The notes below the pieces were generated by a model. That model did no database searches. It had not been told where the DNA came from and worked only from the letters and a program-made list of their open reading frames with translations. A stretch of DNA of 64,000 nt, taken from NCBI RefSeq assembly GCF_039654945.1, contig NW_027361716.1, forward strand, positions 11,904,001 to 11,968,000. Direction: 5' to 3'. Source of the DNA: Dendrobates tinctorius (taxonomy: Eukaryota). The stretch's first letter is position 1. Each line of letters starts with the position of its first letter. A program made the position numbers and the translations under genes. This document shows, piece by piece, positions 1 through 59,853 of this stretch.

Positions 1-1439
1 AAGGTACCAAAAGTAATTGGACAGATTAAATAATTGTAAATAAAATGTTCATTTCTAGTACTTGGTTGAAAACCCTTTGTTGGCAATGACTGCCTGAAGT
101 CTTGAACTCATGGACATCACCAGACGCTGTGTTTCCTCCTTTTTGATGCTCTGCCAGGCCTTCACTGTGGTGGTTTTCAGTTGCTGTTTGTTTGTGGGCC
201 TTTCTGTCTGAAGTTTAGTCTTTAACAAGTGAACTGCATGCTCAATTGGGTTGAGATCAGGTGACTGACTTGGCCATTCAAGAATATTCCACTTCTTTGC
301 TTTAATAAACTCCTGGGTTGCTTTGGCTTTATGTTTTGGGCCATTGTTCATCTGTAGTATAAAACGACGACCAATCAGTTTGCTGCATTTGGCTGGATCT
401 GAGCACACAGTATGGCTCTGAATACCTCAGAATTCATTCGGCTGCTTCTGTCCTGTGTCACATCATCAACAAACACTAGTGACCCAGTGCCACTGGCAGC
501 CATGCATGCCCAAGCCATCACACTGCCTCCGCCGTGTTTTACAGATGATGTGGTATGCTTTGGATCATGAGCTGTATCACGCCTTCGCCATACTTTTCTC
601 TTTCCATCATTCTGGTAGAGGTTGATCTTGGTTTCATCTGTCCAAAAATGCTTTTCCAGAACTGTGCTGGCTTTTTTAGATGTTTTTTAGTCCAGTCTAG
701 CCTTTTTATTATTGATGCTTATGAGTGGCTTGCACCGTGCAGTGAACCCTCTGTATTTACTTTCATGCAGTCTTCTCTTTATGGTAGATTTGGATATTGA
801 TACGCCTACCTCCTGGAGAGTGTTGTTCACTTGGTTGGCTGTTGTGAAGGGGTTTCTCTTCACCATGGAGACTATTCTGCGATCATCCACCACTGTTGTC
901 TTCCGTGGGCGCCCAGGTCTTTTTGCATTGATGAGTTAACCAGTGCTTTCTTTCTTTCTCAGGATGTACCAAACTGTAGATTTTGCCACTCCTAATGTTG
1001 TAGCAATTTCTCAGAAGAGTTTTTTCTGTTTTTGCAGCTTAAGGATGGCTTGTTTCACCTGCATGGAGAGCTCCTTTGACCGCCATGTTTCCTTCACAGC
1101 AAAACCTTCCAAATGCAAGCACCACACCTCAAATCAACTCCAGGCCTTTTATCTGCTTAATTGAGAATGACATAACGAAGGGATTGCCCACACCTGTCCA
1201 TGAAATAGCCTTGGAGTCAATTGTCCAATTACTTTTGGTCCCTTTAAAAACAGGGTGGCACATGTTAAGGAGCTGAAACTCCTAAATTCTTCATCCAATG
1301 TTAATGTGGATACCCTCAAATGAAAGCTGAAAGTCTGAACTTCAACTGCATCTGAATTGTTTTGTTTAAAATTCATTGTGGTAATGTCTAGAACCAAAAT
1401 TAGAAAAATGTTGTCTCTGTCCAAATATGGGCCTATCTG
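1..1439 (-). mobile_element. Tc1/mariner DNA transposon (IR/DR type), frameshifted transposase, one end outside the window
   Basis: ORFs 687-893 (HTH region, RRIVSMVKRNPFTT) and 55-408 (WPSQSPDLNPIE); inner repeat taccaaaagtaattggaca near 5-23 is inverted at ~1222-1240; terminus ...ctg|TA at 1439. Confidence 0.9.
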
Positions 1440-13598: not shown

Positions 13599-16500
13599 TT
13601 ACATTATGTAATCTCTATAACGGGCAGGGATCTGACCTCTAGTACTACGAGTGGATCTACCCAGTATAGATATTTCTGATGACCTGACCTGTTCTCTAAT
13701 GTCTACTGTTGGTGCACTAGTCACTACGCTATAAGTAGACTTGTGTAATATAGGTATTCTGGACTGCCTTCTCTTGACTCCTAGACTCACCATGAGATTG
13801 ACAGATTTGCTGTTAGCAGGGGACAGATTTCCGCATTCCACTGCAGATGTGGTATCTGTTACTGGAGCCATTTCATTATGAGTCTCTGCTTCATCTGGTG
13901 CAGTAGGCTGATGAAAGGTTAGGACTGGCACTATGATAGCCTGATTTACTTGTGTCCATGTCCGAGGAAATTCTCCAAGGATAGTATGGATCTTTTCTTC
14001 CATCTCTACTGTGGGACGTGGAGTGTCTTGAACTTCTTCCTTGTCTTTCAATTGATCAGGGCACACCTTTAGATGATCTCTTGAGACTGCTTCTAAGGTT
14101 TCTCCTCCATCCTTGCTGATGAGGCTTACCTTGGTGTTATTAAAGTCTGAAGGTATAACCGTGTATGGCTCTGCCTCCCACTGGTCATCTAGTTTGTGAA
14201 CATGTCTCTTTCTTTTGAGTACTTGTTCTCCTGGTGTCAAGGGAACTGCAGGGGCGTTTTGATTGTAATTTCTTTCCTGCCTCTGTCTTGCTTGGGACAA
14301 ACTTTTCTCCACACATTCTTGCACTTTGCGGTATTGTTGCTGTCGCTCTGTATCCCAGTCTGCATCTGGTGATGTTGTCTCTGGTGTTAAGACTCCCATG
14401 TCCAAATCAATGGGTAACTTGCCAGGTCTTGACCTCATCAAGTAGGCCGGAGTGAAATTTGTGGAGTTTACCGGTATATGATTATATAGATCTACCAGAT
14501 CTGGCAACTTCTCTGGCCACTGGTTTCGTTCTTCCAGAGGTAAGGTCTTCAATAAGTCCATGACCATCTGGTTCATCTTCTCACACATGACATTTGTCTG
14601 TGGATGTTACGGTGTCATTCTGATTTTGTTGCAACCGTACATGTTACAGAACTCCTGGAACACTTCTGCCTAAAAGGCTGGACCTTGGTCGGTGAGCACT
14701 TGTTCAGGGTATCCGTGCAGTCGACAGAAGTTCTGCTGAAATGCCTTGGCTGCTGTCTTCGCTGTTTGGTCTTTAACAGGCACGACTACCAAGAACCTTG
14801 AGTAATGGTCCACGATGGTCAAAGCATAGGTGTAGCCATTCCTACTCGGAGTTAACTTCAAGGAATCCAAGTCTACCAGTTCAAGCTGCTGTTTTGTGAT
14901 GATCGGCTGTAATGGTGCTCGCTGGCTGTTTCGGTCTTTTCCGCGCAGGTTGCATGGGCCACATTCTCGGCATCACTTCTCAATGGAACTCCTCATGCCA
15001 ACCCAGTAGAATCTTTCACGAAGTAGGACCTCCAACTTCTTCCAACCGAAGTGTCCTGCTCCATTGTGGTATGCCTCTAAGACCATTGGCGCATCCCTCT
15101 TCGGGACTACCACCTGCCAGACCAATTCGTGTGTGCGCAGGTTGATGTTCCTCCAACACAGTTTTCCCTCGTCGATGAAAAGCTTGCCTCTCTCCTTCCA
15201 TAGCTGCTGTGCTTCCTGTGGGTCATCTGGACCAGGGTGTGCATCAGCTTGTGCCAGTCACTCCTTTACTAGCTGGGTCACTATCTTGTGTCTCTGCCCA
15301 CTCATGATGCGGTAATGGGTTCAACTTACTTCTCGTACAATAAATCACTTATTCCTCACCCCTTGGGAGCGCTGGGCTGCAATTGGACGGTGGAAGGCTG
15401 GTAACTCGATTTCTTCGAGTTCTTTTGGATCTTCTCCCCCGTCTGGTGAATTGGGCATCCTGGACAACGCATCCGCATTAGCATTCTTATGTCCTGCTCT
15501 GTACTTGATGATGAACTCATAGTTGGACAGCCGGGCCATCCATCGCTGCTCAAGTGCCCCAAGCTTTGCCGTTTCAAGGTGGGGTAGCGGATTATTGTCC
15601 ATGTAGATGATGAACTTTGCTGAAGCCACATAGTGCTTGAAGCGCTCTGTTATCGCCCAGACTATGGCGAGGAACTCCAATTTAAAGGAACTGTAATGGT
15701 CGGGGTTCCTCTCAGTGGGACGAAGCTTCCTGCTGGCATAGGCAATCACTCTTTCTCTGCCTTTCTGCACTTGTGATAGCACTGCTCCCAATCCCACGTT
15801 GCTGGCGTCAGTGTAAAGTACAAATGGTTGGTCATAGTCAGGGTAGGCCAGGACCTCATCTCTAGTGAGGGCCAGTTTCAACTTGGTGAAGGACACTTCT
15901 ATCCTTTTGTTCCACTCGAACGGAAGACTCTTATTGTTGGCCTTCTTGGATTGGCCCACTAGAAGTTCTTGCAGCGGTGCTGCTATCTTGGTGAAGTCCT
16001 TGATAAATCTTCGGTAGTAGCCTACTAACCCAAGAAATTGCCTCACTTCATGAATAGTGCTGGGTCTTTGCCAGTCCCGGATAATGGTGACTTTGTCAGG
16101 ATCTGGTGCCACACCTTCCGCGCTCACCACATGACCTAGGTACTGCACCTTGGGTTTCAAATGGTGACATTTGGACGATTTTACTTTCAGGCCAAAGTTT
16201 GACAGGGCTTCGAATACCTCGGCTAGGTGCCTCAAATGGTCTTCGTAGGTTTTGGAGAAGACGATGATGTCATCCTGGCACAGCAGAACGGTTTCAAAGT
16301 TTTTTATGTCCAAGGCAGCATTCCTTTAACTGCTGAAATGTTCCTGGCGCATTGCTAAGCCCGAACGGCATGTAGTTAAACTCGCAGAGGCCCATTGGTG
16401 TTGTAAATGCTGTCTTCTCTTTGTCTGCCTCTGCCACAGGAACCTGCCATTACCCACTGGTGAGATCTAAGGTAGAGAAATAATTAGCAGTTCTCAGTGC

Positions 16501-21860: not shown

Positions 21861-22854
21861 ACATATACAGTACAATTAAGATTGCAGACAGACGCAAGTC
21901 AGAATTGACATACAGGAAAATAGAGAAATAATTGTATATATGGAGTAAGCTATGGTTGATGGTAATGATATGTTTTTGCAGAATATCTACCTTTTTGTGT
22001 AGCATTCAAGAATCTGATTTATACTGCAATCAATGGGTTAAATAAAAAAATACCAAATAGGTGTCAGAAAAATATGACAACTGTTCAGTGTTGCTGATAG
22101 AAAAGCTGCACTCTATACGCTGCAGAAGCATTTTTATCCTGTCCTCTTTTGTGTAAGCATGAATGGAATGATTACAGTCAGGGATAAAACTATAGAAAAG
22201 ATCTTCGTTGTGCTGGGAGTCACCGTGAGTGCAAGAGGATCAGGTTTACATCCTGTCAGTCTGTGACTGAATGCTGTATCATTTCCTTTATCAGCAGCTC
22301 TGAACTCCAGGTTTCGGCTTGGCGCTCAGCTGCACTTACCCGCTTAGATTGAGTGCCATATGCCATATTATTGCTGCAATTATGCAAGGAAGTGGAGGTC
22401 AAAAACGTTTCCAATCTGCATGTGGATTAATAACTCTTAAAAAGTCAAATACTACTATATTGATAATAAAAAATCAGAAAAAGGAATTTTTAAAACAAAT
22501 ACAGTCATATGTAAAAGTTTGGGCACCCCTATTAATGTTAACCTTTTTTCTTTATAACAATTTTGGTTTTTGCAACAGCTATTTCAGTTTCATATATCTA
22601 ATAACTGATGGACTCAGTTATATTTCTGGATTCAAATGAGGTTTATTGTACTAACAGAAAATGTGCAATCTGCATTTAAACAAAATTTGACCGGTGCAAA
22701 AGTATGGGCACCCTTATCATTTTCTTGATTTGAACACTCCTAACTACTTTTTACTGACTTCCTGAAGCACTAAATTGGTTTTGTAACCTCATTGAGCTTT
22801 GAACTTCATAGCCAGGTGTATCAAATCATGAGAAAAGTTATTTAAGGTGGCCAC

Positions 22855-23433
22855 TTGCAAGCAGTTCTCCTGTTTGATTCTCCTATGAAGAGTGGCATCA
22901 TGGGCTCCTCAAAACAACTCTCAAATGATCTGAAAACAAAGATTATTCAACATAGCTTTTCAGGGGAAGGATACAAAAAGTTGTCTCAGAGATTTAACCA
23001 GTCAGTTTCCACTGTGAGGAACATAGTAAGGAAATGGAAGAACACAGGTACAGTTCTTGTTAAGCCCAGAAGTGGCAGGCCAAGAAAAATATCAGAAAGG
23101 CAGAGAAGAAGAATGGTGAGAACAGTCAAGGACAATCCACAGACCACCTCCAAAGACCTGCAGCATCATCTTGCTGCAGATGGTGTCACTGTGCATCGGT
23201 CAACAATACAGCGCACTTTGCATAAGGAGAAGCTGTATGGGAGAATGATGCGAAAGAAGCCGTTTCTGCAAGCACGCCACAAACAGAGTCGCCTGAGGTA
23301 TGCAAAAGCACATTTGGACAAGCCAGTTACATTTTGGAAGAAGGTCCTGTGGACTGATGAAACAAAGATTGAGTTGTTTGGTCATACAAAAAGGCGTTAT
23401 GCATGCGCTGTATTGTTGACCGATGCACAGTGA
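22855..23433 (+). CDS. Truncated Tc1 transposase (paired-like DNA-binding domain to first catalytic D); likely start ATG at 22900
   Basis: GRPRK linker and WTDETKIE, then the junction; no internal stops. Confidence 0.75.
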   Translation: MQAVLLFDSPMKSGIMGSSKQLSNDLKTKIIQHSFSGEGYKKLSQRFNQSVSTVRNIVRKWKNTGTVLVKPRSGRPRKISERQRRRMVRTVKDNPQTTSKDLQHHLAADGVTVHRSTIQRTLHKEKLYGRMMRKKPFLQARHKQSRLRYAKAHLDKPVTFWKKVLWTDETKIELFGHTKRRYACAVLLTDAQ

Positions 23434-23764
23434 CACCATCTGCAGCAAGATGATGCTGCCGGTCTTTGGAGGTGGTCTGTGGATTGTCCTTGACTGTTCT
23501 CACCATTCTTCTTCTCTGCCTTTCTGATATTTTTCTTGGCCTGCCACTTCTGGGCTTAACAAGAACTGTACCTGTGTTCTTCCATTTCCTTACTATGTTC
23601 CTCACAGTGGAATCTGACAGGTTAAATCTCTGAGACAACTTTTTGTATCCTTCCCCTGAAAAGCTATGTTGAATAATCTTTGTTTTCAGATCATTTGAGA
23701 GTTGTTTTGAGGAGCCCATGATGCCACTCTTCATAGGAGAATCAAATAGGAGAACTACTTGCAA
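23327..23764 (-). CDS. Truncated Tc1 transposase DNA-binding domain (mirror copy)
   Basis: Nearly identical to the + strand ORF up to HRSTIQR. Confidence 0.7.
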   Translation of the reverse strand: MQVVLLFDSPMKSGIMGSSKQLSNDLKTKIIQHSFSGEGYKKLSQRFNLSDSTVRNIVRKWKNTGTVLVKPRSGRPRKISERQRRRMVRTVKDNPQTTSKDRQHHLAADGVTVHRSTIQRMHNAFLYDQTTQSLFHQSTGPSSKM

Positions 23765-24123
23765 GTGGCCACTTTAAATACCTTTTCTCATGATTTGATA
23801 CACCTGGCTATGAAGTTCAAAGCTCAATGAGGTTACAAAACCAATTTAGTGCTTCAGGAAGTCAGTAAAAAGTAGTTAGGAGTGTTCAAATCAAGAAAAT
23901 GATAAGGGTGCCCATACTTTTGCACCGGTCAAATTTTGTTTAAATGCAGATTGCACATTTTCTGTTAGTATAATAAACCTCATTTGAATCCAGAAATATA
24001 ACTGAGTCCATCAGTTATTAGATATATGAAACTGAAATAGCTGTTGCAAAAACCAAAATTGTTATAAAGAAAAAAGGTTAACATTAATAGGGGTGCCCAA
24101 ACTTTTACATATGACTGTATATA

Positions 24124-25302
24124 GGGCCCAATTTATCAAGACAAATATAGCACAAAAAAGGTCTTAGAGAGCCTCCAAAAATTCAAAAAATACTAGCAAA
24201 AGGCTGAGATGCTTACCTCACAAGGTCTCCAAACAAATGCACCATCAGGATACAGTGGACCCATGTAGTTAAGATGGCGGCAACAAGGTGCAGAAATACC
24301 GATGTGGCAACCACTCACAACCTCCCAATCCCAATGGAAGGGGTGGCTGCTTGGTATATTACTGCACAAAAAAAGACCAAATGGGCCCAACTGCACCCTG
24401 AAAAAATGTTTGCAAAAAACACATATAAAAAATATGTGAGGTATTAATTAATACTTTTGTCAAAATACATAAGCTCGTAACCCACGCCACGGGTCCCCAC
24501 ACTTTCTTTTAAGTGTGGGGACCCATAATGTTGGTTACAAGCTTATGTATTTTGGCCAAAGTATTAACTTAATACCGCACATATTTTTTATATGTGTTTT
24601 TTGCACATTTTTCAGGGTGCAGTTGGGCCCATTTGGTCTTGTAAACTGTGGTGTCTCTTCACTTGGGATGGATTGGATAGCGCTAGGCAGCCCACCTGAT
24701 CTAATAGAAGGGTGTCACTAATAGGTTGTTAACCTGGATGCGGTGCATTTCCATTGTGTGAACAGCGCCGCATACAAGTCTTTTATGTGCAGTAATATAC
24801 CAAGCAGCCACCCCCTCCATTAGGATTGGGAGGTTGTGAGTGGTTGACTCATTGGTATTTCTGCACCTGTGTTGCCCCCATCTTAACTACATGGGTCCAC
24901 TTCATCACGACTTTATCATGGCCAGCATTTTTCACATCGGTTTTGATAAGGAGATGTGTTGGAGAGAGCCGCTCCTGATTAATAAAGAGGCATACATACA
25001 TAAATCTGGAGCCTCAGATAAGCGGCGCGCACCTCTGTTTGCACCTTGCCATAAATCCTACTCCAGTCCTTGCTGGAGTAATATTTGTGGCATAGTTAAC
25101 ACTACCGCTCATCATGTTTAGATGCAGTCATCATGCCCCCACTCCGACCCAGTTCTGCCCACTCTGTTCCACGGTGAAAGTGGTGTGAGAACACCGAAGG
25201 TCTCAAAATTTTATTGTGGCTTCGAGTTAAGGCAAAATGATGTGACTTTTCAAAGCTTTTTATGCCAGAATACTGGCTTAAAAGCTTTGATGAGTTGGGC
25301 CC
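24124..25302. mobile_element. Harbinger-like MITE with nested palindromic insertion
   Basis: TIR gggcccaatttatcaa / ttgatgagttgggccc; 3-bp TSD ata. Confidence 0.65.
24253..24901. repeat. Long imperfect inverted repeat of unassigned family
   Basis: 24253-24368 pairs with 24786-24901; 24374-24502 pairs with 24511-24640. Confidence 0.85.
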
Positions 25303-30999: not shown

Positions 31000-33560
31000 G
31001 GGTTTCCACTGATTGGGCACATCAGGGGCTCTCCAAATGCAACATTGCGTCTGATCTCAATTCCAGCCAATTCTGAGTTGAAAAAGTCATATGGTGCTCC
31101 TTCCCTTCCAAGCTCTGCCATGCGCCCAAACAGTGTTTTACCCCCACATGTAGGGTATCAGCCTACTCAGGACAAATTGCAAAACAACTTTTGGGGTCCA
31201 ATTTCTCCTGTTACCCTTAGGAAATTAAAAAAATGGGGGCAAAAATATCATTTTTGTGGAAAAAAATGATTTTTTTATTTTCACGTCCGAGCGTTATAAA
31301 CTTCTGTGAAGCACTTGGGGGTTCAAAGTGCTCACCACACATCTAGATAAGTTCCGTGGGGGGTCTAGTGTCCAAAATGGGGTCACTTGTTGGGAGTTTC
31401 AATAGTTTAGGTACATCAGGGGCTCTCCAAACGCACATGACACCCGCAGACCATTCCATCAAAGTCTGCATTCCAAAATGGCACTGCTTCCCTTCCGAGC
31501 CCCAACGTGTGTCTATACAGTAGTTTTCTCCCACATATGGGGTGTCAGCGTACTCAGGACAAATTGGACAACAACTTTTGGGGTCCAATTTCTCCTGTTA
31601 CCCTTGGGAAAATGAAAAAATTGGGGACTAATTGATCATGTTTGTGGAAAAAATAAGATTTTTTTATTTTCATGCCCGGGCATTATAAACTTCTGTGAAG
31701 CCCTTGGGGGTTCAAATTGCTCACCACACATCTAGATAAGTTCCTTAGGGGTTCTCGTTTCCAAATTGGGGTCATTTGTGGGTGTTTCCACTGTTTAGGT
31801 ACATTAGGGGCTCTCCAAAGGCAACATGACACCCGCAGACCATTCCATCAAAGTCTGCATTCCAAAACGTCACTACTTCCCTTCCGAGCCCTGACGTGTG
31901 TCCATACAGTAGTTTTCTCCCACATATGGGGTGTCAGCTTACTCAGGACAAATTGGACAACAACTTTTGGGGTTCAATTTCTCCTGTTACCCTTGGGAAA
32001 ATAAAAAAATTGGGGACTAGTTGATCATGTTTGTGGGAAAAATACGATTTTTTTATTTTCATGCCCTGGCATTATAAACTTCTGTGAAGCCCTTGGGGGT
32101 TCAAAGTGCTCACCTCACATCTAGATAAGTTCCTTAGGGGGTCTAGTTTTCAAAATGGGGTCATTTGTGGGGGGTTTCCACTGTTTAGGTACATTAGGGG
32201 CTCTCCAAAGGCAACATGACACCCGCAGACCATTCCATCAATGTCTGCATTCCAAAACGTCACTACTTCCCTTCCGAGCCCTGACGTGTGTCCATATAGT
32301 AGTTTTCTCCCACATATGGGGTGTCAGCTTACTCAGGACAAATTGGACAACAACTTTTGGGGTTCAATTTCTCCTTTTACCCTTGGGAAAATAAAAAAAT
32401 TGGGGAATAATTGATCATGTTTGTGGAAAAAATACGATTTTTTTATTTTCATGCCCGGGCATTATAAACTTCTGTGAAGCCCTTGGGGGTTTAAAGTGCT
32501 CACCTCACATCTAGATAAGTTCCTTAGGGGGTCTAGTTTTCAAAATGGGGTCATTTGTGGGGGGTTTCCACTGTTTAGATACATTAGGGGCTCTCCAAAG
32601 GCAACATGACACCCGCAGACCATTCCATCAATGTCTGCATTCCAAAACGTCACTACTTCCCTTCCGATCCCCGACGTGTTCCCATACAGTAGTTTTCTCC
32701 CACATATGGGGTATCAGCATACTCAGGACAAATTGGACAACAACTTTTGGGGTCCAATTTCTCCTGTTACCCTTGGGAAAATAAAAAAAATGGTGACTAA
32801 AAGATCATGTTTGTGGAAAAAATACGAATTTTTTATTTTCACGCCCGGGCGTTATAAACTTCTGTGAAGCACTGGGGGGTTCAAAGTGCTCACCACACAT
32901 CTAGATAAGTTCCTTGGGGGGTCTAGTTTCCAAAATGGTGTCATTTGTGGGGGGTTTCCACTGTTTAGGTACATCAGGGGTTTTCCAATCGCGACATGAT
33001 GTCCGATCTCAATTCCAGCCAAAAACGTCAAATGGCGCTGCTTCCCTTCCGAGCTCTGCCATGCGCCCAAATAGTGGTTTACCCCCACATTTGGGGTATC
33101 AGCATACTCAGGACAAATTGCACAATAACTTTTAGGGTCCTGTTACCCTTGGGAAAATAAAAATTGGGGTGAAAAGTTCATTTTTGTGGAAAAAATATGA
33201 TTTTTTAATTGTACCGCTGTACGTTATAAACTTCTGTAAAGCCCTTGTGGGTTCAAAGTTCTCACCACATATCTAGATAAGTTCCTTGGGGGGTCTAGTT
33301 TCCAAAATGGGGTCACTTGTAGGGGGTTTCCACTGTTTAGGTACATCAGGGACTCTCCAAACGTGACATGGCGTCCGATCTGAATTCCAGCCAATTTTGC
33401 ATTGAAAAAGTCAAACGGCGCTCCTTCCATTCTGAGCTCTGCCATGCGCCGAAACAGTCGTTCCCCCCCACAAATCAGGTATCAGCGTACTCAGGACAAA
33501 TTGCACAATAACTTTTGCAGTCCAATTTCTCCTGTTACCCTTGGTAAAATAAAAAAAATT
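31000..33560. repeat. ~390-bp tandem array, about 6.5 units, two unit types
   Basis: ttataaacttctgt recurs at ~31294, 31683, 32072, 32462, 32852 and 33224. Confidence 0.95.
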
Positions 33561-34288: not shown

Positions 34289-35091
34289 CCGTATATATTC
34301 GAGTATAAGCCAACCCGAGTATAAGCCGAGGCACCTAATTTTGCCACGGAAAACTGGGTAAGCTTATTGACTCGAGTATAAGCCGAGTATGCATTGTCCC
34401 CCTCATCCCTGTCATGCTATGTGTGGCTTTCACCATCCTGTCCCGGTATGTGTAGCTCTCCATGTTGTATGCATGGTTCACCCCCCTCCCATCCTTGTAT
34501 GCATGGCTCACCCCTGTCCCATCCCATCATTGTATGCATGGCTCACCCCCCGTTCCATCCTTGTATGCATGGCTCACCCCCCATCCTTGTATGCATGGCT
34601 CACCCCCGTCCCATCGTTATATGAATGGCTCACCCCCCGTCCCATCCTTGTATGCATGGCTCACCCCCGTCTCATTGTTATATGCATGGCTCACCTCCGT
34701 CCCATCGTTATATGCATGGCTCACTCCCGAGCTACTCACCCTCCTCACGCCGCCCCTGCATCTCCTTCCCGGTGCCAGCAGCTCTCCTGTGCCGAAGGAT
34801 CACATGGTACCGCTCATTAAGGTAATGAATACACGCTCCACGCCTATGGAGACGCTTGCATAGTCATTACCTTAATGATCTATACCACGTGATCGCTCAG
34901 CACAGGGGAAGAGCTGCCAGCGCCAGGATGGAGATGCAGGGACTGAGATGCAGCGACGGAGGGTGAGTATGACGCTCCCCTTCCCCCGCCGGCTTTCTGA
35001 ACAATGACTCGTGTATAAGTCGAGGGGGGGGGGGCGTTTTCAGCACAAAAAAATGTGCGGAAACTCTCGGCCTATACAAGAGTATATACGG
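34289..35091. mobile_element. pogo/Tigger-like MITE with ~32-bp minisatellite (34480-34725)
   Basis: TIR ccgtatatattcgagtataagcc / ggcctatacaagagtatatacgg; TA TSD. Confidence 0.85.
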
Positions 35092-39099: not shown

Positions 39100-40797
39100 T
39101 TGCCACATTATGCTCCTCTACCTTGTCCATTAGCTGATTCTTCCTGTGAAGACCACTCATGTGACGGCCACCAAGATCACATAGGGTGCACAGTTTTCCA
39201 CAGAACAAGAGAGGACAACAAGGTAGCAATGTCCATAGAAGACAGACTGTTTTTGGACATCATGGATCGAGAGATGGTAAGAGATGAGTCAAAGAGTTGG
39301 ATGGCCCCTCTACCATTTAAACCCCAGAGGCAACGCTTACCCACCAGTCAGAAGTCTTGTAAGGGTTGGCACCATTGCAAACACGCATTTACCACTCCTA
39401 ACCTGGAAAACGCCAAAAACACGATAATTCGTACCATACAACGCGAGTGTTACGCTAAAGAAATAGACAACCTCAACAAAGGTCAACCCATTTCTATAGA
39501 CTGCGTCTTGAAAAAGCTTGATCCAATAATTGACCAAAACGAGCTGATACGAATTGGAAGTCGTCTTCAGGAAGCCAAGGTGGAATTCGTGGAAAAACAC
39601 CCTGTAATAATTCCTGGCCATCATCATGTGACTATTCTGCTCGTACAGCACCATCATGTTTTGGTGAAACATCAGGGTCGATCGTTTACCGAAGAGAATC
39701 TACTAACTGCTGGACTATGGATAGTCGGAGCAAAGAGATGTGTGAGTAAACTCATCTTCAACTGTGTGACTTGTCGCAAACTCCGCGGTATGACTCAAAG
39801 CCCAAAGATGGCCAATCTCCCATCAGACAGACTTAGTATGGATCCTCCCTTTACCAACGTTGGACCGGATGTATTCGGGCCGTGGTCTGTGGTTGCATGG
39901 CACACTAGAAGAGTCCAAGCCAATGCAAAACGCTGGGCAGTTATGTTTACCTGCATGTCCATCAGAGCAGTTCACATCGAAGAGATTGAATCCATGGACA
40001 CATCAAGTTTCATAAATGCACTCCGACGCTTCATTGCAATCAGAGGCACCGTGAAACACATTCGCTCTGACAGAGGCACAAATTTCATAGGAGCAGTGAA
40101 AGAACTCCAAATTCCTTCCAACCTAGACATTACGAGTGTGGAAAGATACCTGAATGAACAGGGATGTACCTTGACCTTCAATTTACCACACTCTTCTCAC
40201 ATGGGAGGTGCTTGGGAGAGGATGATAGGAATAGCATGCAGAATCTTAGACTCTATCTTCTTGCAAGAAAGTAGCACAAGACTCACACACGAAGGTTTGA
40301 CTACATTCTTGGCAGAAGTTTCGGCCATCATAAATGCCAGACCATTGACTGCACTCTCCAGTGATGCTGAAGATCCAACCATTCTCACTCCTGCCATGTT
40401 ACTCACTCAGAAAACCAACACTCCTAGCGCTCCACTGGGAGAATTCAGCAGCAAGGACCTCTACAGACATCAATGGAGACAAGTTCAAAGTCTCTGCAAT
40501 ACTTTCTGGGCCAGATGGAGAAAGCAATACCTCTCCACCTTACCGCCTAGGAAGAAGTGGCAGATCGACAAGCCGAACATCAAACCCGGTGATATTGTGC
40601 TCATGAAGGACAGTCAGTCACATCGAAATGAGTGGCCTCTGGGCCTTATCACCAAGGTGTTCCCAAGCAAAGATGAGAAGGTGCGCAGGGTCGAGGTCAA
40701 AGTGTGGAGGGCTGGGGAGAGTAAACTATTCCTCAGACCAGTTGCGGAGCTAATTCTATTGCTTTCGCCTAAAGAGCCTGTAAGTGGCATTAGTTAA
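39100..40797 (+). CDS. BEL/Pao integrase-containing ORF with RT and RNase H deleted
   Basis: HHCC (H..HQG..CVTC), DVFGP, SDRGTNF, GGAWER, WPLG; APLPFK is joined directly to post-RNase H sequence. Confidence 0.85.
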   Translation: MPHYAPLPCPLADSSCEDHSCDGHQDHIGCTVFHRTREDNKVAMSIEDRLFLDIMDREMVRDESKSWMAPLPFKPQRQRLPTSQKSCKGWHHCKHAFTTPNLENAKNTIIRTIQRECYAKEIDNLNKGQPISIDCVLKKLDPIIDQNELIRIGSRLQEAKVEFVEKHPVIIPGHHHVTILLVQHHHVLVKHQGRSFTEENLLTAGLWIVGAKRCVSKLIFNCVTCRKLRGMTQSPKMANLPSDRLSMDPPFTNVGPDVFGPWSVVAWHTRRVQANAKRWAVMFTCMSIRAVHIEEIESMDTSSFINALRRFIAIRGTVKHIRSDRGTNFIGAVKELQIPSNLDITSVERYLNEQGCTLTFNLPHSSHMGGAWERMIGIACRILDSIFLQESSTRLTHEGLTTFLAEVSAIINARPLTALSSDAEDPTILTPAMLLTQKTNTPSAPLGEFSSKDLYRHQWRQVQSLCNTFWARWRKQYLSTLPPRKKWQIDKPNIKPGDIVLMKDSQSHRNEWPLGLITKVFPSKDEKVRRVEVKVWRAGESKLFLRPVAELILLLSPKEPVSGIS

Positions 40798-46564: not shown

Positions 46565-47548
46565 AAAAGTGAACCTGGAAATTATAGGCCAGTAAGTCTA
46601 ACCTCCATTGCTGGTAAAATATTTGAAGGGTTTCTGAGGGATGTTATTCTGGATTATCTCAATGAGAATAACTGTTTAACGCCATATGAGCATGGGTTTA
46701 TGAGGAATCGCTCCAATCCAACCAATCTAATCAGTTTTTATGAAGAGGTAAGCTATAGATTGGACCGACCAAGGTGAGTCTTTGTATGTGGTATATCTTG
46801 ATTTTTCCAAAGTGTTTGATACCGTGCCACACAAGAGGTTGGTACACAAAATGAGAATGCTGGGTCTGGGGGAAAATGTGTGTAAATGGGTAAGTAACTG
46901 GCTTAGTGATAGAAAGCAGAGAGTGGTTATAAATGGTATATTCTCTAACTGGGTCGCTGTGACCAGTGCGGTACCGCAGGGGTCGGTGTTGGGACCTATT
47001 CTCTTCAACATATTTATTAACGTTCTGGTAGAAGGTTTACACAGTAAAATATTGATATTTGCAGGTGATACAAAACTATGTAAAGCAGTCAATACAAGGG
47101 AAGATAGTTTTCTGCTACAGATGGATCTGGATAGGTTGGAAACTTTGGCCGAAAGGTGGCAGATGCAGTTTAACAGAGACAAATGTAAGGTTATACACAT
47201 GGGAAGAAAGAATCAATATCACCATTACACACTGAACGGTAAACCACTGGGTAAATCTGACACGGAGAAGGACTTGGGGATCCTAGTTAATGATAAACTT
47301 ACCTTGAGCAGCCAGTACCAGGCAGCGGCTGCCAAAGCAAACAGAATCATGGGGTGCATTGAAAGAGGTCTGGATACACATGATGAGAGCATTATACTGC
47401 CTCTGTACAAATCCCTGGTTAGACCGCACATGGAGTAGTGTGTAGTTTTGGGCACCGGTGCTCAGGAAGGATACATTGGAAATAGAGTGAGTACAAAGGA
47501 GGGCAACAAAATTAATAAAGGGGATGGGGGAACTACAATACCCATAGA
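46565..47548 (+). pseudogene. CR1 LINE reverse transcriptase fragment
   Basis: NYRPVSLTS, YLDFSKVFD, PQGSVLGP, FAGD (FADD mutated), EKDLG. Confidence 0.92.
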
Positions 47549-52666: not shown

Positions 52667-53824
52667 TCAAGGATGAAACCCAAAGTTACAGAAAAAGGGG
52701 GACATCAAGGTGGCAGAACTAGCTCTATTATTTAAAGCGAATTCGGCCAAGGGCAAAAATGAAACCCAATCATCCTGATCAGCAGATATAAAACATCTCA
52801 AATAGGACTCCAAAGTCTGGTTTGCTCTCTCCGTCTGCCCATTGGTCTGAGGGTGAAACGCAGAGGAGAAGGACAACTGAATTCCTAGCTTGGAATAAAG
52901 GGCTTTCCAGAATCTGGAAACAAACTGAACTCCTCTGTCCGATACAATGATCTCAGGAATCCCATGCAACCGAACCACCTGTTGTAAAAACAAGGGTACC
53001 AACTCTGAGGAAGATGGCAACTTTGGGAGTGGTACAAGATGGACCATCTTAGAAAATCTATCACAAATCACCCAGATAACAGTCATTCTCTGAGAGACAG
53101 GAAGATCAGAAATAAAATCCATTGAAATATGGGTCCATGGCTTCTTAGGCATCGGCAAGGGCATCAACAACCCACTAGAGCGAGAACAGGGTTTAGACCG
53201 GGAACAAGTCCCACAGGACTGCACAAAATTCCTGACATCACGAGATAAGGCAGGCCACCAAAAAGACCGACTCACCAATTCTCTGGTACCAAAAATACCT
53301 GGATGACCAGCCAATGCGGAGCAATGAACTTCAGACATCACTCTCTTCCTCCACTGGTCAGGAACATACAATTTTCCCATAGGACAACGATCAGGTTTGT
53401 CCTCCTGGAATTCTTCCAGAGCACGTCTCAAATCGGGCGAGATGGCAGAAAGAACTACCCCCTCACCTAGGATGGTAGTAGGCTTGGTCACAATAGGAGA
53501 ATCAGCAAAGAAACTCCTAGAAAGGGCGTCTGCCTTAACATTCTAAGTGCCTGGAAGAAAGGAGACCACAAAATCAAAATGCGTAAAAAGCAAGGCCCAC
53601 CTTGCCTGTCTAGGATTCAAGCATTTGGCCGACTCAAGGTAAATAAAATTCTTGTGGTCAGTGAGGACCACAACTTGATGTCTAGCTCCCTCCAACCAAT
53701 GTCTCCACTCCTCAAATGCCCATTTCATGGCTAACAATTCCCGATTCCCCACATCATAGTTGCGTTCAGATGGGGAGAACTTTCGGGAAAAGAAGGCACA
53801 GGGACAAAACAGCTCCTGCACCAA
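52667..53824 (-). pseudogene. RNase H and integrase core, frameshifted
   Basis: [16 protein letters not shown]; H..GHPG..CGTC; SMDFI, SDRGVQF, GQTER. Confidence 0.92.
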
Positions 53825-55346
53825 TCTCTGAAGCGTCTACCTCCACCTGAACAGGAAGTGAGACATCAGGTTGCCGCAAAACCGGGGCAGAAGTGAACCT
53901 CCGCTTCAGCTCCTGAAAGGACGAAACAGCCTCTGAAGACCAATTCAGCACATCAGCACCCTTCTTAGTTAAATCAGTCAGTGGTTTAGCAATACCAGAA
54001 AAGTTAGCTATAAATTTACGATAAAAATTAGCAAAACCCAAAAACTTCTGGAGAGCCTTCAAAGAAGTGGGTTGAACCCAATCACAAATGGCCTGTACCT
54101 TGGCCGGGTCCATTTCAATAGTTGACGGAAACAAAATAAATCCCAAAAATGAAATCCTCTGCACACCAAAAAGGCACTTCAATCCCTTAACATACAAGGA
54201 ATTCACTCTCAAAATCCGGAACACAGTCCAAACATGTTCCACATGAGAATCCCAATCCTTGGAAAAGATCAAAATATCATCCAGATAGATGATCAAAAAC
54301 TTATCCACAAAGTCCCGGAAAATATCATTCATGAAGGATTGGAAGACAGAAGGGGCATTAGTGAGCCCAAAAGGCATCACCAGGTACTCAAAATGTCCCT
54401 CCGGAGTATTAAACGCCGTCTTCCATTCATCCCCATGCTTGATGCAAATAAGATTATACGCCCCCCTGAGGTCAAGCTTAGTAAGCCAGCAAGCACCTTT
54501 AACTCTGGAGAATAGATCAGAAATCAGGGGTAACGGATACTGATATTTAACCGTAATTTTGTTGAGGGAACGATAATCAATACAAGGCCTTAATGAACCA
54601 TCTTGCTTGGCCACGAAAAAAAAAACAGCACCTAATGGTGAAGAGGATGGTCTAATATGACCCTTCTCCAACGACTCCTTAATATAAGATCGCATAGCCT
54701 CGCGTTTGGGTGCAGATAAATTGAAAAGTCGACCCTTGGGAAATTTACACCCAGGTCTCAACTCAATTGCACAGTCATAACTCCTATGAGGAGGCAAAGA
54801 CGCAGACCTGCTCTCACTAAATACATCATAAAAATCAGCGAAATAGTCAGGAACATCATGCGACTGGGGAGAGGTGGAGAAAACAGGAGTGTCGCCAAGA
54901 GCAAACCGACAACCCCAACTCACCACAGACACAGATTTCCAATCCAAAACCGGACTATGGATTTGCAACCAGGGAAAACCAAGAACAATGGTATCATGTA
55001 AATTATGCAACACCAAAAATCTGCAATTTTCTTGATGGTCTGGGGCGACCCGCATTATCACCTTGGTCCAAAACTGAGGTTTATTCTTCGCCAAAGGAGT
55101 AGCATCAATACCCCTCAAAGGAATAGGCATCCGCAGAGGTGTCATAGGAAAACCACAATGTTTAGCAAAATCCAAGTCCATCAGATTCAAGGCCGCTCCT
55201 GAATCCACAAAAGCCTTCACGGAAAATGTGGATAAGGAGCAGATCAGAGTAATTGCCAAAAGAAACTTAGGTTGTACGCAAAAAACCCTGCCAAAAAATG
55301 TCCAACACGTCTGATAGAAAAAGGCCCTGAAGTCGCTAGACTTCAA
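53766..55346 (-). CDS. Protease plus reverse transcriptase ORF fused to LTR sequence
   Basis: FVDSGA, CIDYR, MPFGL, YLDD, VDAS; first ~24 codons are LTR-derived with a TTG start. Confidence 0.85.
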
Positions 55347-55949: not shown

Positions 55950-57932
55950 ATGGACCCAGTTCAGACCTTTGCCCAAATGCAGCAGACCCTTACTAATGAG
56001 ATTAGGGGGCTGCGTGGAGGGTTAGTGCGGCAGCTGCAGCTGTTGGTGGGCTCTGGGGGCTTGGTTCAGGAACAGGCTCAGCCAGAACCCAAGATATCCC
56101 TCCCTGACAGATTTTCTGGAGGGAGAGATCAATTTTTGCTGTTTCAAAAAGCCTGTAAATTGTATTTCAGGCTGCGCCCTCGTTCATCAGGGAGTGAGGA
56201 GCAACAGGTGGGAATCATTATGTCCCTTCTTAAAGGGGATCCCCAATCCTGGGCCTTCTCCCTACCGGACGATTCTCCATCTTTAGAGTCCGTGGACAAG
56301 TTCTTTGCGGCTTTGGCGCTTGTGTATGGGGATCCTGATGGCGTCGCCCTGGTGGAATCCCGAATCCGTAGGTGTAAACAGGGAGCCCGGGTCGCTGAGG
56401 AGTACTTCTCAGAGTATAGGAGATGGGCCACTAATACTCAGTACTCAGTGGAATGACCCTGCACTTAGGAGTCAATTTGTGCAGGGTTTGTCTCCAAAGT
56501 TGCAGGATACTCTGGTGCAGTACGCCGCCCCCAGGTCGCTGGAGGCCGCCATGTCCCTTGCCATCCGGGTGGATAGACGCCTTAGGGAAAGACATATACA
56601 AAAAGTGCCCCCTGATGTCCTCGCTAGGGAGGAGGACCCACCAGTGTGGACGGAGGAACCCAGACAGCCCGGTGTTGTTGATACAAAAAAGGGGGTGTCT
56701 GAGGCTTGTCATGGTGGGGGGTATCCTTTTCCTGTGGGAAGCCTGGCCATTTTATTAGAGCCTGCCCAGTTCATGCTAAGTCTCCTGTCGAACCTATGCA
56801 AGTAGGAGGAGCTAGTTTGTATTCGGACCTGCCTATGGTTCGGGGAGTGGTGTCGGCATGTTTGTACTGTGGGCAGACTGGTCATGTCCTGAAGGCTTTC
56901 CCATTGCGCGCCAAATTATCTGTGCCATCTGAGAAGCCGCATTCCCCTGGTTGCTTGGAGGGAGGCGACCAGGGAGTATACATTTCCTCCATTTTGCCCT
57001 CCCAAGGTACCATGTCAGCAGAGGTCTTGGCTGGCGGGGTACCGGAGGTGATACCGGTATTTGTGGACAGCGGAGCAGGAGTCAGTCTGGTGGATGCTCG
57101 CTTTGTCCAGACTCATGGTCTGAGGTGTAGGACTCTAGCCCAGCCTATAAGCGTCCAGGCCATAAACTCTGTTCCACTGAGCCAGGGGAGCTTGACCAAG
57201 GTCGTAGAAAATATCCATCTGTGTATAGGACATCATGAGGAGTCCTTGTCATGCTACGTCTTAGAGGGAATGCCAGTACCTATTGTTTTAGGCCTCCCTT
57301 GGCTGAAGAGACACAACCCGGTAATAGATTGGCGGGCGAGGGAAGTGGTCAGCTGGGGGCACTCGTGTGAGGGCTGCTGCCTAGGAACTACTGTCTCTGC
57401 CATCTCTCTTCAATGGACCCCTTCCTCTCTGGTGAGGGCAGCGGATGTGCTGCAGGAGAGTAGGGGCAAGTCTCAACCCTCGCCATTGGCCATCCCTGGG
57501 AGGCGCAGACCTCGTGGTGGAAGGGGTTGGAGGGTGGTGTACCCCTTGGTGAGGTGCGGGGGTGTGAGTGTGGTGACACAGGGGGATGCCTCTGTTGTCA
57601 ATCCCAGAAAGAGTTCTCCAAGTGGTGACAAACGAATGAGTGGCAATAAACGTTCAGGTCCGGACCTGTGTGTGAACGAGCGTGTATGGGTGGCCACCAA
57701 AAAACATTTAGTGGAAGTGTGTTGCGGAGTGTTACCAGCTCATACCAAACATACACATACACAACCCGTTCCCCAGGTCAGCGCTTCGGAGATGTGTGTT
57801 GCCTCCAGAACATACGTTGCCAATACCAGCGGGCTCATTTCTCATCAACCTGACATGCAGCTAGTTGCTGGGGTGAACTCTGGGTCTGGGTGTCCCCGCT
57901 GTAGGTGGTTCCCTGCTGGGGAGTGGTCTTGA
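55950..57932 (+). pseudogene. Ty3/PEG10-like gag plus protease with short pol remnants, two frameshifts
   Basis: PEPKISLPDRFSG, WNDPAL..QF, CGKPGHFIRAC, CLYCGQTGH, FVDSGA, VLGLPWL..HNPVIDW; tactcag duplication at ~56435-56448. Confidence 0.88.
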
Positions 57933-59714: not shown

Positions 59715-59853
59715 NNNNNNNNNNNNNNNNNNNNNNNNNNNNNNNNNNNNNNNNNNNNNNNNNNNNNNNNNNNNNNNNNNNNNNNNNNNNNNNNNNNNNN
59801 NNNNNNNNNNNNNNNNNNNNNNNNNNNNNNNNNNNNNNNNNNNNNNNNNNNNN
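59715..59853. other. Assembly gap adjoining a (CTAT)n microsatellite (to ~59904)
   Basis: N run followed by ctat repeats. Confidence 0.99.

What the first reader, a model, noticed from the sequence alone, without database searches (positions are those of the whole stretch)
22502..24117. Fold-back Tc1 made of two 5' halves: candidate hairpin-RNA silencer or dominant-negative source
Seen: ~714-bp arms differing by roughly ten substitutions or fewer, an ~190-bp spacer, a short microhomology at the junction (~23402-23406), clean TA flanks, and two convergent open ORFs encoding only the DNA-binding domain. Established: inverted duplications of transposon 5' ends (maize Mu killer) silence their family through hairpin RNA, and truncated transposases can act as repressors. 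Inference: a young element that is still mobilisable in trans and could suppress its own family.
Basis: partly seen in the sequence, partly recalled or inferred. Interest (0 to 1): 0.72.

Follow-up and report, generated by a model that had tools for sequence, protein, structure and literature searches.

The report
Fold-back Tc1 transposon, two left halves
A dead "jumping gene" in a poison-frog-like genome is built from two mirror-image copies of its own front half; the structure is real, but it is a known kind of repair accident, and its proposed self-silencing role is untested.

Summary
Window 22502-24117 is a 1616-bp Sleeping-Beauty-type (IR/DR) Tc1 element with a TA on each side. It consists of the left 902 bp of the element joined to an inverted copy of the left 714 bp.

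- **Arms:** 714 bp, with 8 substitutions and no indels.
- **Loop:** 188 bp, which is simply the continuation of the left copy.
- **Missing parts:** there is no right half, and the second and third catalytic residues are absent.
- **Junction:** it lies at a shared TG, next to a perfect 7-nt inverted microhomology (TTATGCA / TGCATAA). This is the signature of aborted gap repair with template switching, as published for the mosquito Tc1/mariner derivative Goblin.

Ordinary left-plus-right copies of the same family (about 91% identical) occur in Ranitomeya imitator. An assembly artefact is unlikely, because the arms differ, the repeat stops exactly at the transposon tips, and the flanks are unrelated.

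The hairpin-silencer idea is structurally possible. A read-through RNA would fold into a stem of about 700 bp, and each arm carries a poly(A) signal for the opposite unit. No expression or small-RNA data could be consulted. The repressor-protein idea is weaker, because every predicted mRNA would carry its own antisense arm.

The scan noted the same 1614-1616-bp fold-back on other pieces of this genome at least seven times. One was followed up, with the same verdict. I could not check those copies myself. This is a new member of a known kind.

The parts
22500..22501 (.). TA dinucleotide flanking the left tip (target-site duplication or original flank)
22502..23403 (+). Left copy: the first 902 bp of an IR/DR Tc1 element (left IR, 5' UTR, first 168 codons)
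   Evidence: Collinear with full-length relatives: 78.6% to the Cirrhinus element and about 91% to Ranitomeya imitator copies.
22502..22713 (+). Left inverted repeat (about 212 bp), with outer DR about 22502-22532 and inner DR about 22686-22717
   Evidence: Direct-repeat family D1, spacing 185. IR length taken from relatives.
22900..23433 (+). ORF: 168 residues of transposase (PAI, RED, linker, first Asp motif), then 9 junction-encoded residues and a stop
23216..23403 (+). 188-bp single-copy spacer, the loop of the fold-back; it is part of the left copy
23219..23225 (+). TGCATAA, exact complement of the last 7 nt of the left copy; lies 3 nt beyond the end of the arm
23397..23405 (+). Junction: TTATGCA (end of the left copy) plus TG, which is shared by both parents. 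The parent reads TTATGCA-TGG.
23404..24117 (-). Right arm: inverted copy of the first 714 bp of the element (a second left IR, 5' UTR, first 105 codons)
23327..23719 (-). ORF: 107 Tc1-matching residues (PAI and a truncated RED; the last two lie just beyond the arm end) plus a 23-residue tail read from the antisense of the spacer
23972..23977 (+). AATAAA inside the inverted left IR, 145 nt from the right tip. Its mirror image on the - strand is at 22642-22647.
   Evidence: The same motif is present in R. imitator right IRs.
24118..24119 (.). TA dinucleotide flanking the right tip

Best explanation
This is a non-autonomous fold-back derivative of a Sleeping-Beauty-type Tc1 transposon. I take it to be a repair by-product with no shown function.

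**Origin (inferred).** A full-length copy was excised, and the gap was repaired by copying a sister copy.
1. One new strand copied the left end inward for about 900 nt.
2. The other new strand began in the right terminal repeat. The two 212-bp terminal repeats are nearly identical, so it switched to the left repeat and also copied the left half, for about 720 nt.
3. The two new ends paired at a 7-nt inverted microhomology plus a TG, and were joined with loss of 3 nt.

A snap-back of a single nascent strand, followed by transposition, gives the same product.

**Result (shown).** The element has two left ends, four intact transposase-binding repeats, no catalytic core and TA flanks. A family transposase could move it in trans. 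The scan's notes of same-sized copies elsewhere in the genome suggest this has happened.
For: - **Structure and boundaries:**
- **Family membership and truncation:** HTH_SB and HTH_Tnp_Tc3_2 only. The alignment to 340-aa relatives ends just before the WR that follows RRYA. The match to Sleeping Beauty covers PAI, RED and the first 54 residues of the catalytic-domain crystal construct.
- **Symmetric IRs:** left and right IRs are nearly identical over 212 bp and diverge only inside that point. A switch between them is therefore easy and leaves no trace.
- **Junction:** parents read TTATGCA-TGG, the window reads TTATGCA-TG-CGCTG, and TGCATAA sits 3 nt from the arm end.
- **Precedent:** Goblin, from the Tc1/mariner element Ozma in Aedes, has both subterminal regions derived from one end, inverted microhomology at the junction, and a template-switch gap-repair model. 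The same paper lists fold-back MITE families (PMC3814204).
- **Two identical ends can transpose:** shown for mariners, and the paper states the same for Sleeping Beauty (PMC4505599). A Sleeping Beauty substrate with identical left IRs was used in PMC5224488.
- **No sign of selection:** the three coding differences between the arms are all non-synonymous.
Against: - The formation event itself cannot be observed.
- The 7-nt microhomology needs a 3-nt bulge or deletion. A plain 2-nt (TG) end joining is an equally simple reading.
- R. imitator and fish copies read TGCACAA or TACACAA where the window reads TGCATAA, so the perfect 7-mer may have arisen after the event.
- Copy number and movement as a unit rest on unchecked scan notes, not on my own data.
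- Lack of function is a default position, not a result.
Confidence: 0.75

Rival explanations
1. Mu-killer-like silencer. The element is transcribed from its own 5' UTR promoter or by read-through. The RNA folds into a long hairpin, which is diced into small RNAs. These silence transposase-coding copies of the family.
For: - The predicted RNA of the element folds at -1367 kcal/mol, against about -385 for shuffles. In that fold, 709 of 761 pairs are in mirror register.
- The stem covers the 5' UTR and the first 105 codons of the transposase.
- Each arm carries an AATAAA that would end a transcript started in the opposite arm. There is no such signal in the spacer.
- The structure parallels maize Mu killer (my own knowledge).
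- Sense and antisense Tc1 transcripts and Tc1-derived piRNAs are reported in Xenopus embryos (PMC3144230).
Against: - No transcript or small-RNA data were available.
- No promoter was shown.
- In vertebrate germ lines, transposon control runs mainly through piRNAs, which need no hairpin, and long dsRNA is often edited rather than diced (my own knowledge).
- There is no evidence that an active autonomous copy of this subfamily still exists in this genome.
- The arms drift freely.
Confidence: 0.12
2. Source of a dominant-negative repressor. One or both ORFs produce a DNA-binding-only transposase fragment that occupies the terminal repeats or poisons transposase oligomers.
For: - The left ORF keeps complete PAI and RED subdomains and the linker.
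- Both ORFs are open.
- Truncated transposases act as repressors in other families, such as the P-element KP repressor (my own knowledge).
Against: - Any mRNA ending at the available poly(A) signals carries the antisense arm, which would pair over the start codon and ORF.
- All 3 coding differences between the arms are non-synonymous.
- The right ORF lacks the end of RED.
- Open frames of 168 and 107 codons are expected by chance at about 1% divergence.
Confidence: 0.04
3. Two independent insertions of the same family in opposite orientation at neighbouring TA sites, followed by one deletion. The deletion removed both 3' halves and the host DNA between them.
For: This would give the same TA-flanked two-left-end structure. 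The family is abundant in poison-frog genomes.
Against: - It needs three events instead of one.
- It does not explain the inverted 7-nt microhomology.
- If the scan's notes of same-length copies on other pieces are right, the structure predates this insertion.
Confidence: 0.05
4. Assembly artefact: a chimeric palindromic read or a mis-join.
For: Long-read libraries can contain fold-back chimeras (my own knowledge).
Against: - The arms differ at 8 sites.
- The palindrome is asymmetric, with a 188-nt loop.
- It ends exactly at the transposon tips with TA.
- The flanks are unrelated to each other.
Confidence: 0.03

Closest known systems
Goblin, a MITE derived from the Tc1/mariner element Ozma in Aedes aegypti (PMC3814204)
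   Same: - Both subterminal regions come from one end of the parent.
- The junction lies at microhomologous sites that are in inverted orientation on the parent.
- The published explanation is template switching between the terminal repeats during gap repair, followed by microhomology-mediated joining.
   Different: - Goblin is a miniature element without coding sequence, built from the right end.
- This element is full-sized (1616 bp), built from the left end, and duplicates the 5' UTR and the DNA-binding part of the ORF.
Mu killer of maize (inverted duplication of the 5' part of MuDR)
   Same: Both are inverted duplications that include a terminal repeat and the 5' part of the transposase gene, and both could give a long hairpin RNA.
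   Different: - Mu killer is a single locus in a plant, transcribed from a flanking promoter, with demonstrated siRNAs and heritable silencing.
- Here none of that has been tested.
- This element keeps two usable ends, so it may itself move.
Sleeping Beauty and other IR/DR Tc1 elements of fish and frogs
   Same: - TA target.
- Tips starting CAGT.
- 212-bp IRs, each with two DRs.
- Paired-like PAI plus RED domain.
   Different: There is no right half and no complete DDE domain.
Fold-back MITEs with long TIRs (C. elegans PAL and CeleTc2/Tc5 families, Xenopus Xfb, MADE1 from Hsmar1)
   Same: They are non-autonomous Tc1/mariner-type derivatives that are essentially hairpins. Some are sources of small RNAs.
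   Different: Those are short (tens to a few hundred bp) and non-coding.

Membership tests
Tc1/mariner, IR/DR (Sleeping-Beauty-like) subgroup | TA target-site dinucleotide at both tips | tested here: met
   TA at 22500-22501 and 24118-24119
Tc1/mariner, IR/DR (Sleeping-Beauty-like) subgroup | Long terminal inverted repeats with two direct repeats (transposase-binding sites) per end | tested here: met
   The outer and inner DRs are 185 bp apart in both arms (D1 and D3). The IR is 212 bp in relatives.
Tc1/mariner, IR/DR (Sleeping-Beauty-like) subgroup | Paired-like N-terminal DNA-binding domain (PAI plus RED) | tested here: met
   HTH_SB at 1.5e-15 and HTH_Tnp_Tc3_2 at 7.5e-23. Matches to PDB entries 2m8e, 5unk and 5cr4.
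Tc1/mariner, IR/DR (Sleeping-Beauty-like) subgroup | Complete DDE catalytic domain (needed for an autonomous element) | tested here: not met
   Only the first Asp motif is present. There is no DDE_3 hit. It is therefore a non-autonomous derivative.
Template-switch or abortive-gap-repair fold-back derivative (Goblin type) | Both halves derived from the same end of the parent | tested here: met
   Both arms align to the left 714 bp of full-length relatives. Nothing matches the 3' half.
Template-switch or abortive-gap-repair fold-back derivative (Goblin type) | Junction at microhomology that is inverted on the parent | tested here: met
   TTATGCA paired with TGCATAA, plus a shared TG. The pairing needs a 3-nt bulge.
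Template-switch or abortive-gap-repair fold-back derivative (Goblin type) | Amplified as a family with one junction and different flanks | not testable with these tools
   - There is no second copy in the window.
- The junction 24-mer is absent from the metagenome contigs.
- Scan notes list at least 7 same-sized fold-backs on other pieces, which I could not check.
Mu-killer-type hairpin silencer | Inverted duplication of a terminal repeat plus the 5' part of the transposase gene | tested here: met
Mu-killer-type hairpin silencer | Transcribed into hairpin RNA and processed into small RNAs | not testable with these tools
   Only the predicted fold and the poly(A) signals are available.
Mu-killer-type hairpin silencer | Silences autonomous copies of the family | not testable with these tools
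   This needs genetics or reporter assays.
Classical Foldback (FB) or Galileo elements | Long arms built of tandem sub-repeats, with P-superfamily ends and 7-9-bp duplications | tested here: not met
   The arms are unique Tc1 sequence with TA flanks.

The most novel reading that the evidence does not exclude
The fold-back is a mobile, self-spreading silencer. Its two preferred left ends let it parasitise the family transposase and amplify to many copies. Each copy expresses a hairpin of 300-700 bp against the 5' UTR and DNA-binding region of the transposase, using the element's own promoter and poly(A) signal. The more the family transposes, the more silencer copies it seeds, giving a built-in brake on a Tc1 burst in a giant poison-frog genome.
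Probability: 0.1. Interest if true: 0.7.

Novelty: new member of a known kind. Interest (0 to 1): 0.33.

Why it matters
Poison-frog genomes are swollen with Tc1 elements, and how such bursts stop is an open question. A full-sized fold-back that keeps two usable ends and could express a hairpin against its own transposase would be a natural vertebrate counterpart of maize Mu killer. It is directly testable with small-RNA and long-read data.

As it stands, it mainly gives a clean, dated example of template-switch repair producing a two-left-end Tc1 derivative. The example is dated by the 1.1% divergence between the arms.

Tried and rejected
- **Other copies in the window:** none. A search for the tip 30-mer and blastn/tblastn of the element found only the two arms, plus an unrelated Tc1-like fragment at 597-1079 (-) with 36% amino-acid identity.
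- **Paralogous empty site for the flanks:** none in the window. The window-wide comparison with the R. imitator loci also shows no match at the flanks.
- **Junction 24-mer in metagenome contigs:** 0 hits.
- **Protein databases:** there was no hit above 88% identity in the word-indexed search. The one 90% hit in the representative search is the Astyanax gene model. No protein carries the junction-encoded tail, so this genome's copies are not in those collections and copy number could not be counted. For that reason I did not spend exact-sequence look-ups on the window's own ORFs.
- **Left versus right IR type:** I tried to tell whether the right arm's IR is left-type or right-type, to separate in-situ formation from snap-back plus transposition. 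This failed, because left and right IRs of the family have no diagnostic differences.
- **Rfam:** no family match anywhere in the window.
- **Xenopus Tc1 families:** in the supplement of PMC3144230, only Tc1-7_Xt shares the DR core. None is this element.
- **Host-gene context:** whether the site is intronic, and on which strand, was not determined. The long ORFs nearby that have a Pfam match are all retroelement genes; three others match nothing.

Full report
**Observation.** The window holds a near-perfect inverted repeat with arms 22499-23215 and 23404-24120, 99% complementary, 188 nt apart.

- A gapped alignment and a script count 8 substitutions and no indel in 714 bp.
- The 30-mer that begins TACAGTC occurs exactly twice, once at each outer end in opposite orientation, with 0 expected by chance.
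- The flanks on the two sides are unrelated to each other and are not repeated elsewhere in the window.
- The only N run is far away, at 59715-59853.

**What it is.** Both arms encode the N-terminus of a Tc1 transposase.

- Pfam finds HTH_SB and HTH_Tnp_Tc3_2 and no DDE domain.
- PDB sequence matches are to the Sleeping Beauty PAI subdomain, the RED subdomain, and the first 54 residues of the catalytic-domain crystal construct.
- Each arm has the IR/DR layout, with an outer and an inner direct repeat 185 bp apart (families D1 and D3).
- Related proteins are 80-88% identical fragments from fishes (Esox, Oncorhynchus, Erpetoichthys, Prochilodus, Cirrhinus) and from the poison frog Ranitomeya imitator. 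Full-length members have 335-340 residues.
- I fetched a full-length fish element, L001, of 1639 bp with 212-216-bp IRs. The window's left copy aligns to its first 893 bp at 78.6%.
- I also fetched two R. imitator loci, L002 and L003. [quoted passage not shown]
- Against these, the window's left copy runs collinearly from the tip to 23403. The "spacer" 23216-23403 is therefore just the part of the left copy that the shorter right arm lacks.
- Nothing in the element matches the 3' half of the family.
- The left ORF (22900-23433) ends after GHTKRRYA, which is past the first catalytic Asp motif but before the second Asp and the Glu. It then reads 9 residues across the junction.
- The right ORF (23719-23327, minus strand) has 107 Tc1-matching residues, breaks inside RED, and reads 23 residues from the antisense of the spacer.

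**Is it an artefact?** This is unlikely.

- The arms differ at 8 sites.
- The palindrome is asymmetric.
- It stops exactly at the transposon tips with TA.
- The flanks are not palindromic.

**The junction.**

- Parental copies read TTATGCA-TGG (R. imitator L003 and fish L001).
- The window reads TTATGCA-TG-CGCTG.
- The TG at 23404-23405 can come from either partner.
- In addition, TTATGCA (23397-23403) is the exact complement of TGCATAA at 23219-23225, which lies 3 nt beyond the end of the arm.
- The two partners can therefore pair over 7 + 2 nt, with a 3-nt bulge that is missing from the product.

This is the pattern described for Goblin, a derivative of the mosquito Tc1/mariner element Ozma. 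In Goblin, both subterminal regions come from one end, the junction microhomologies are inverted on the parent, and the authors propose template switching between the terminal repeats during gap repair, followed by microhomology-mediated joining. The same paper lists many fold-back MITE families (PMC3814204).

In this family the left and right IRs are nearly identical over 212 bp and diverge only inside that point. A nascent strand started in the right IR could therefore re-invade the left IR without leaving a trace. It follows that the fold-back could have formed in place, and the clean TA flanks do not by themselves prove later transposition. A snap-back of one nascent strand followed by transposition is equally compatible.

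One caveat applies. R. imitator and fish copies read TGCACAA or TACACAA where the window reads TGCATAA, so the perfect 7-mer may be younger than the event.

**Age and selection.** The arm divergence is 8/714, or 1.1%.

- With the fish copy as outgroup, four changes are derived in the right arm, two in the left, and two are undecided.
- The three changes inside the shared coding part are all non-synonymous: Q34 in the left ORF, D36 and R88 in the right, where relatives have L, V and L.
- That is what neutral drift gives.
- Open frames of 168 and 107 codons are expected at this divergence, so the intact ORFs are not evidence of function.

**Mobility.** All four DRs and the tips are identical between the arms; the first difference is 147 nt from the tip.

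- Elements with two identical preferred ends transpose at least as well as natural ones in mariners. The same is stated for Sleeping Beauty (PMC4505599).
- A Sleeping Beauty substrate with identical left IRs was used in PMC5224488.
- Mobilisation in trans is therefore plausible.

The scan's own notes list at least seven other fold-back Tc1 findings of 1614-1616 letters with 714-bp arms on other pieces of this genome. One was followed up, with the verdict [quoted passage not shown]. If these are distinct loci, the element is a family that has spread. I could not verify this, for three reasons:

- The window has no second copy.
- The junction is absent from the metagenome contigs.
- The protein collections hold no product of this genome's copies.

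**Hairpin-silencer reading.**

- An RNA of the whole element is predicted to fold at -1367 kcal/mol, against about -385 for shuffles. In that fold, 709 of 761 pairs are in mirror register.
- The only canonical poly(A) signals are AATAAA at 23972 (+) and its mirror at 22647 (-). Each lies inside the IR, 145 nt from the far tip.
- The same motif is present in the right IRs of R. imitator copies, so it is probably the family's natural signal.
- A transcript started in either 5' UTR would thus run through the loop into the antisense arm and end there. It would carry a stem of several hundred base pairs that includes the start codon and the ORF.
- This makes a hairpin RNA structurally plausible, and it makes efficient translation of either ORF unlikely. 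That argues against the dominant-negative protein idea.
- No promoter, transcript or small RNA could be examined.
- Tc1 sense and antisense transcripts and Tc1 piRNAs are documented in Xenopus embryos (PMC3144230). That work concerns ordinary copies of other families.

**A lead from fish.** An Astyanax mexicanus gene model (P0122) begins with 125 residues 90% identical to this transposase. It continues directly with 26 residues that match the antisense-frame translation of the same Tc1 region at 81%. This suggests an independent fold-back with a short loop in a fish copy of the lineage. I could not fetch its DNA, and a mis-spliced model is not excluded.

**Verdict.** The thing is a two-left-end fold-back derivative of an IR/DR Tc1 element, most likely a product of aborted gap repair with template switching. 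It may be a member of an amplified non-autonomous family in a poison-frog-like genome. It is a new member of a known kind. The silencer hypothesis is possible but untested, and the repressor-protein hypothesis is unlikely.

Noticed in passing
window 24249-24906: Directly right of the element lies a nested inverted-repeat structure that looks like a MITE. The outer arms are about 24249-24373 and 24781-24906 (92-93% complementary). They enclose an inner palindrome at 24373-24640, with 33-nt perfect arms and further arms with a 6-nt loop.
   Followed up: no
L002:8520-8545 (Ranitomeya imitator): This ordinary R. imitator copy has an internal deletion of roughly 90 bp. Its left breakpoint lies within about 10 nt of the window's fold-back junction, just after AAAAAGGC. 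This may be a preferred stalling point of repair synthesis, or a coincidence.
   Followed up: no
protein P0122 (Astyanax mexicanus, UniRef A0A3B1J718), residues 1-148: This host gene model starts with Tc1 residues 1-125 in sense and then has 26 residues of the antisense frame of the same Tc1 region. It hints at an independent fold-back Tc1 in a fish.
   Followed up: partly
window 31100-33557: A tandem array of 6.3 units of 390 bp, 88% matching. The same unit occurs at about 79% identity in R. imitator locus L003:25600-26527.
   Followed up: no
window 597-1079 (-): A fragment of a different Tc1-like family, 36% amino-acid identity to the fold-back's ORF over 163 residues.
   Followed up: no
window 13599-16313 (-), 39100-40797 (+), 46782-47438 (+), 52667-55346 (-), 56706-57932 (+): Several retroelement ORFs: RT/RNase H, an integrase with DUF5641, a lone RT fragment, protease-RT-integrase, and gag-protease. 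The window is mostly transposable elements, and no host exon was recognised.
   Followed up: no
window 34465-34728: A minisatellite of about 30-bp units, 8.7 copies, rich in C runs.
   Followed up: no
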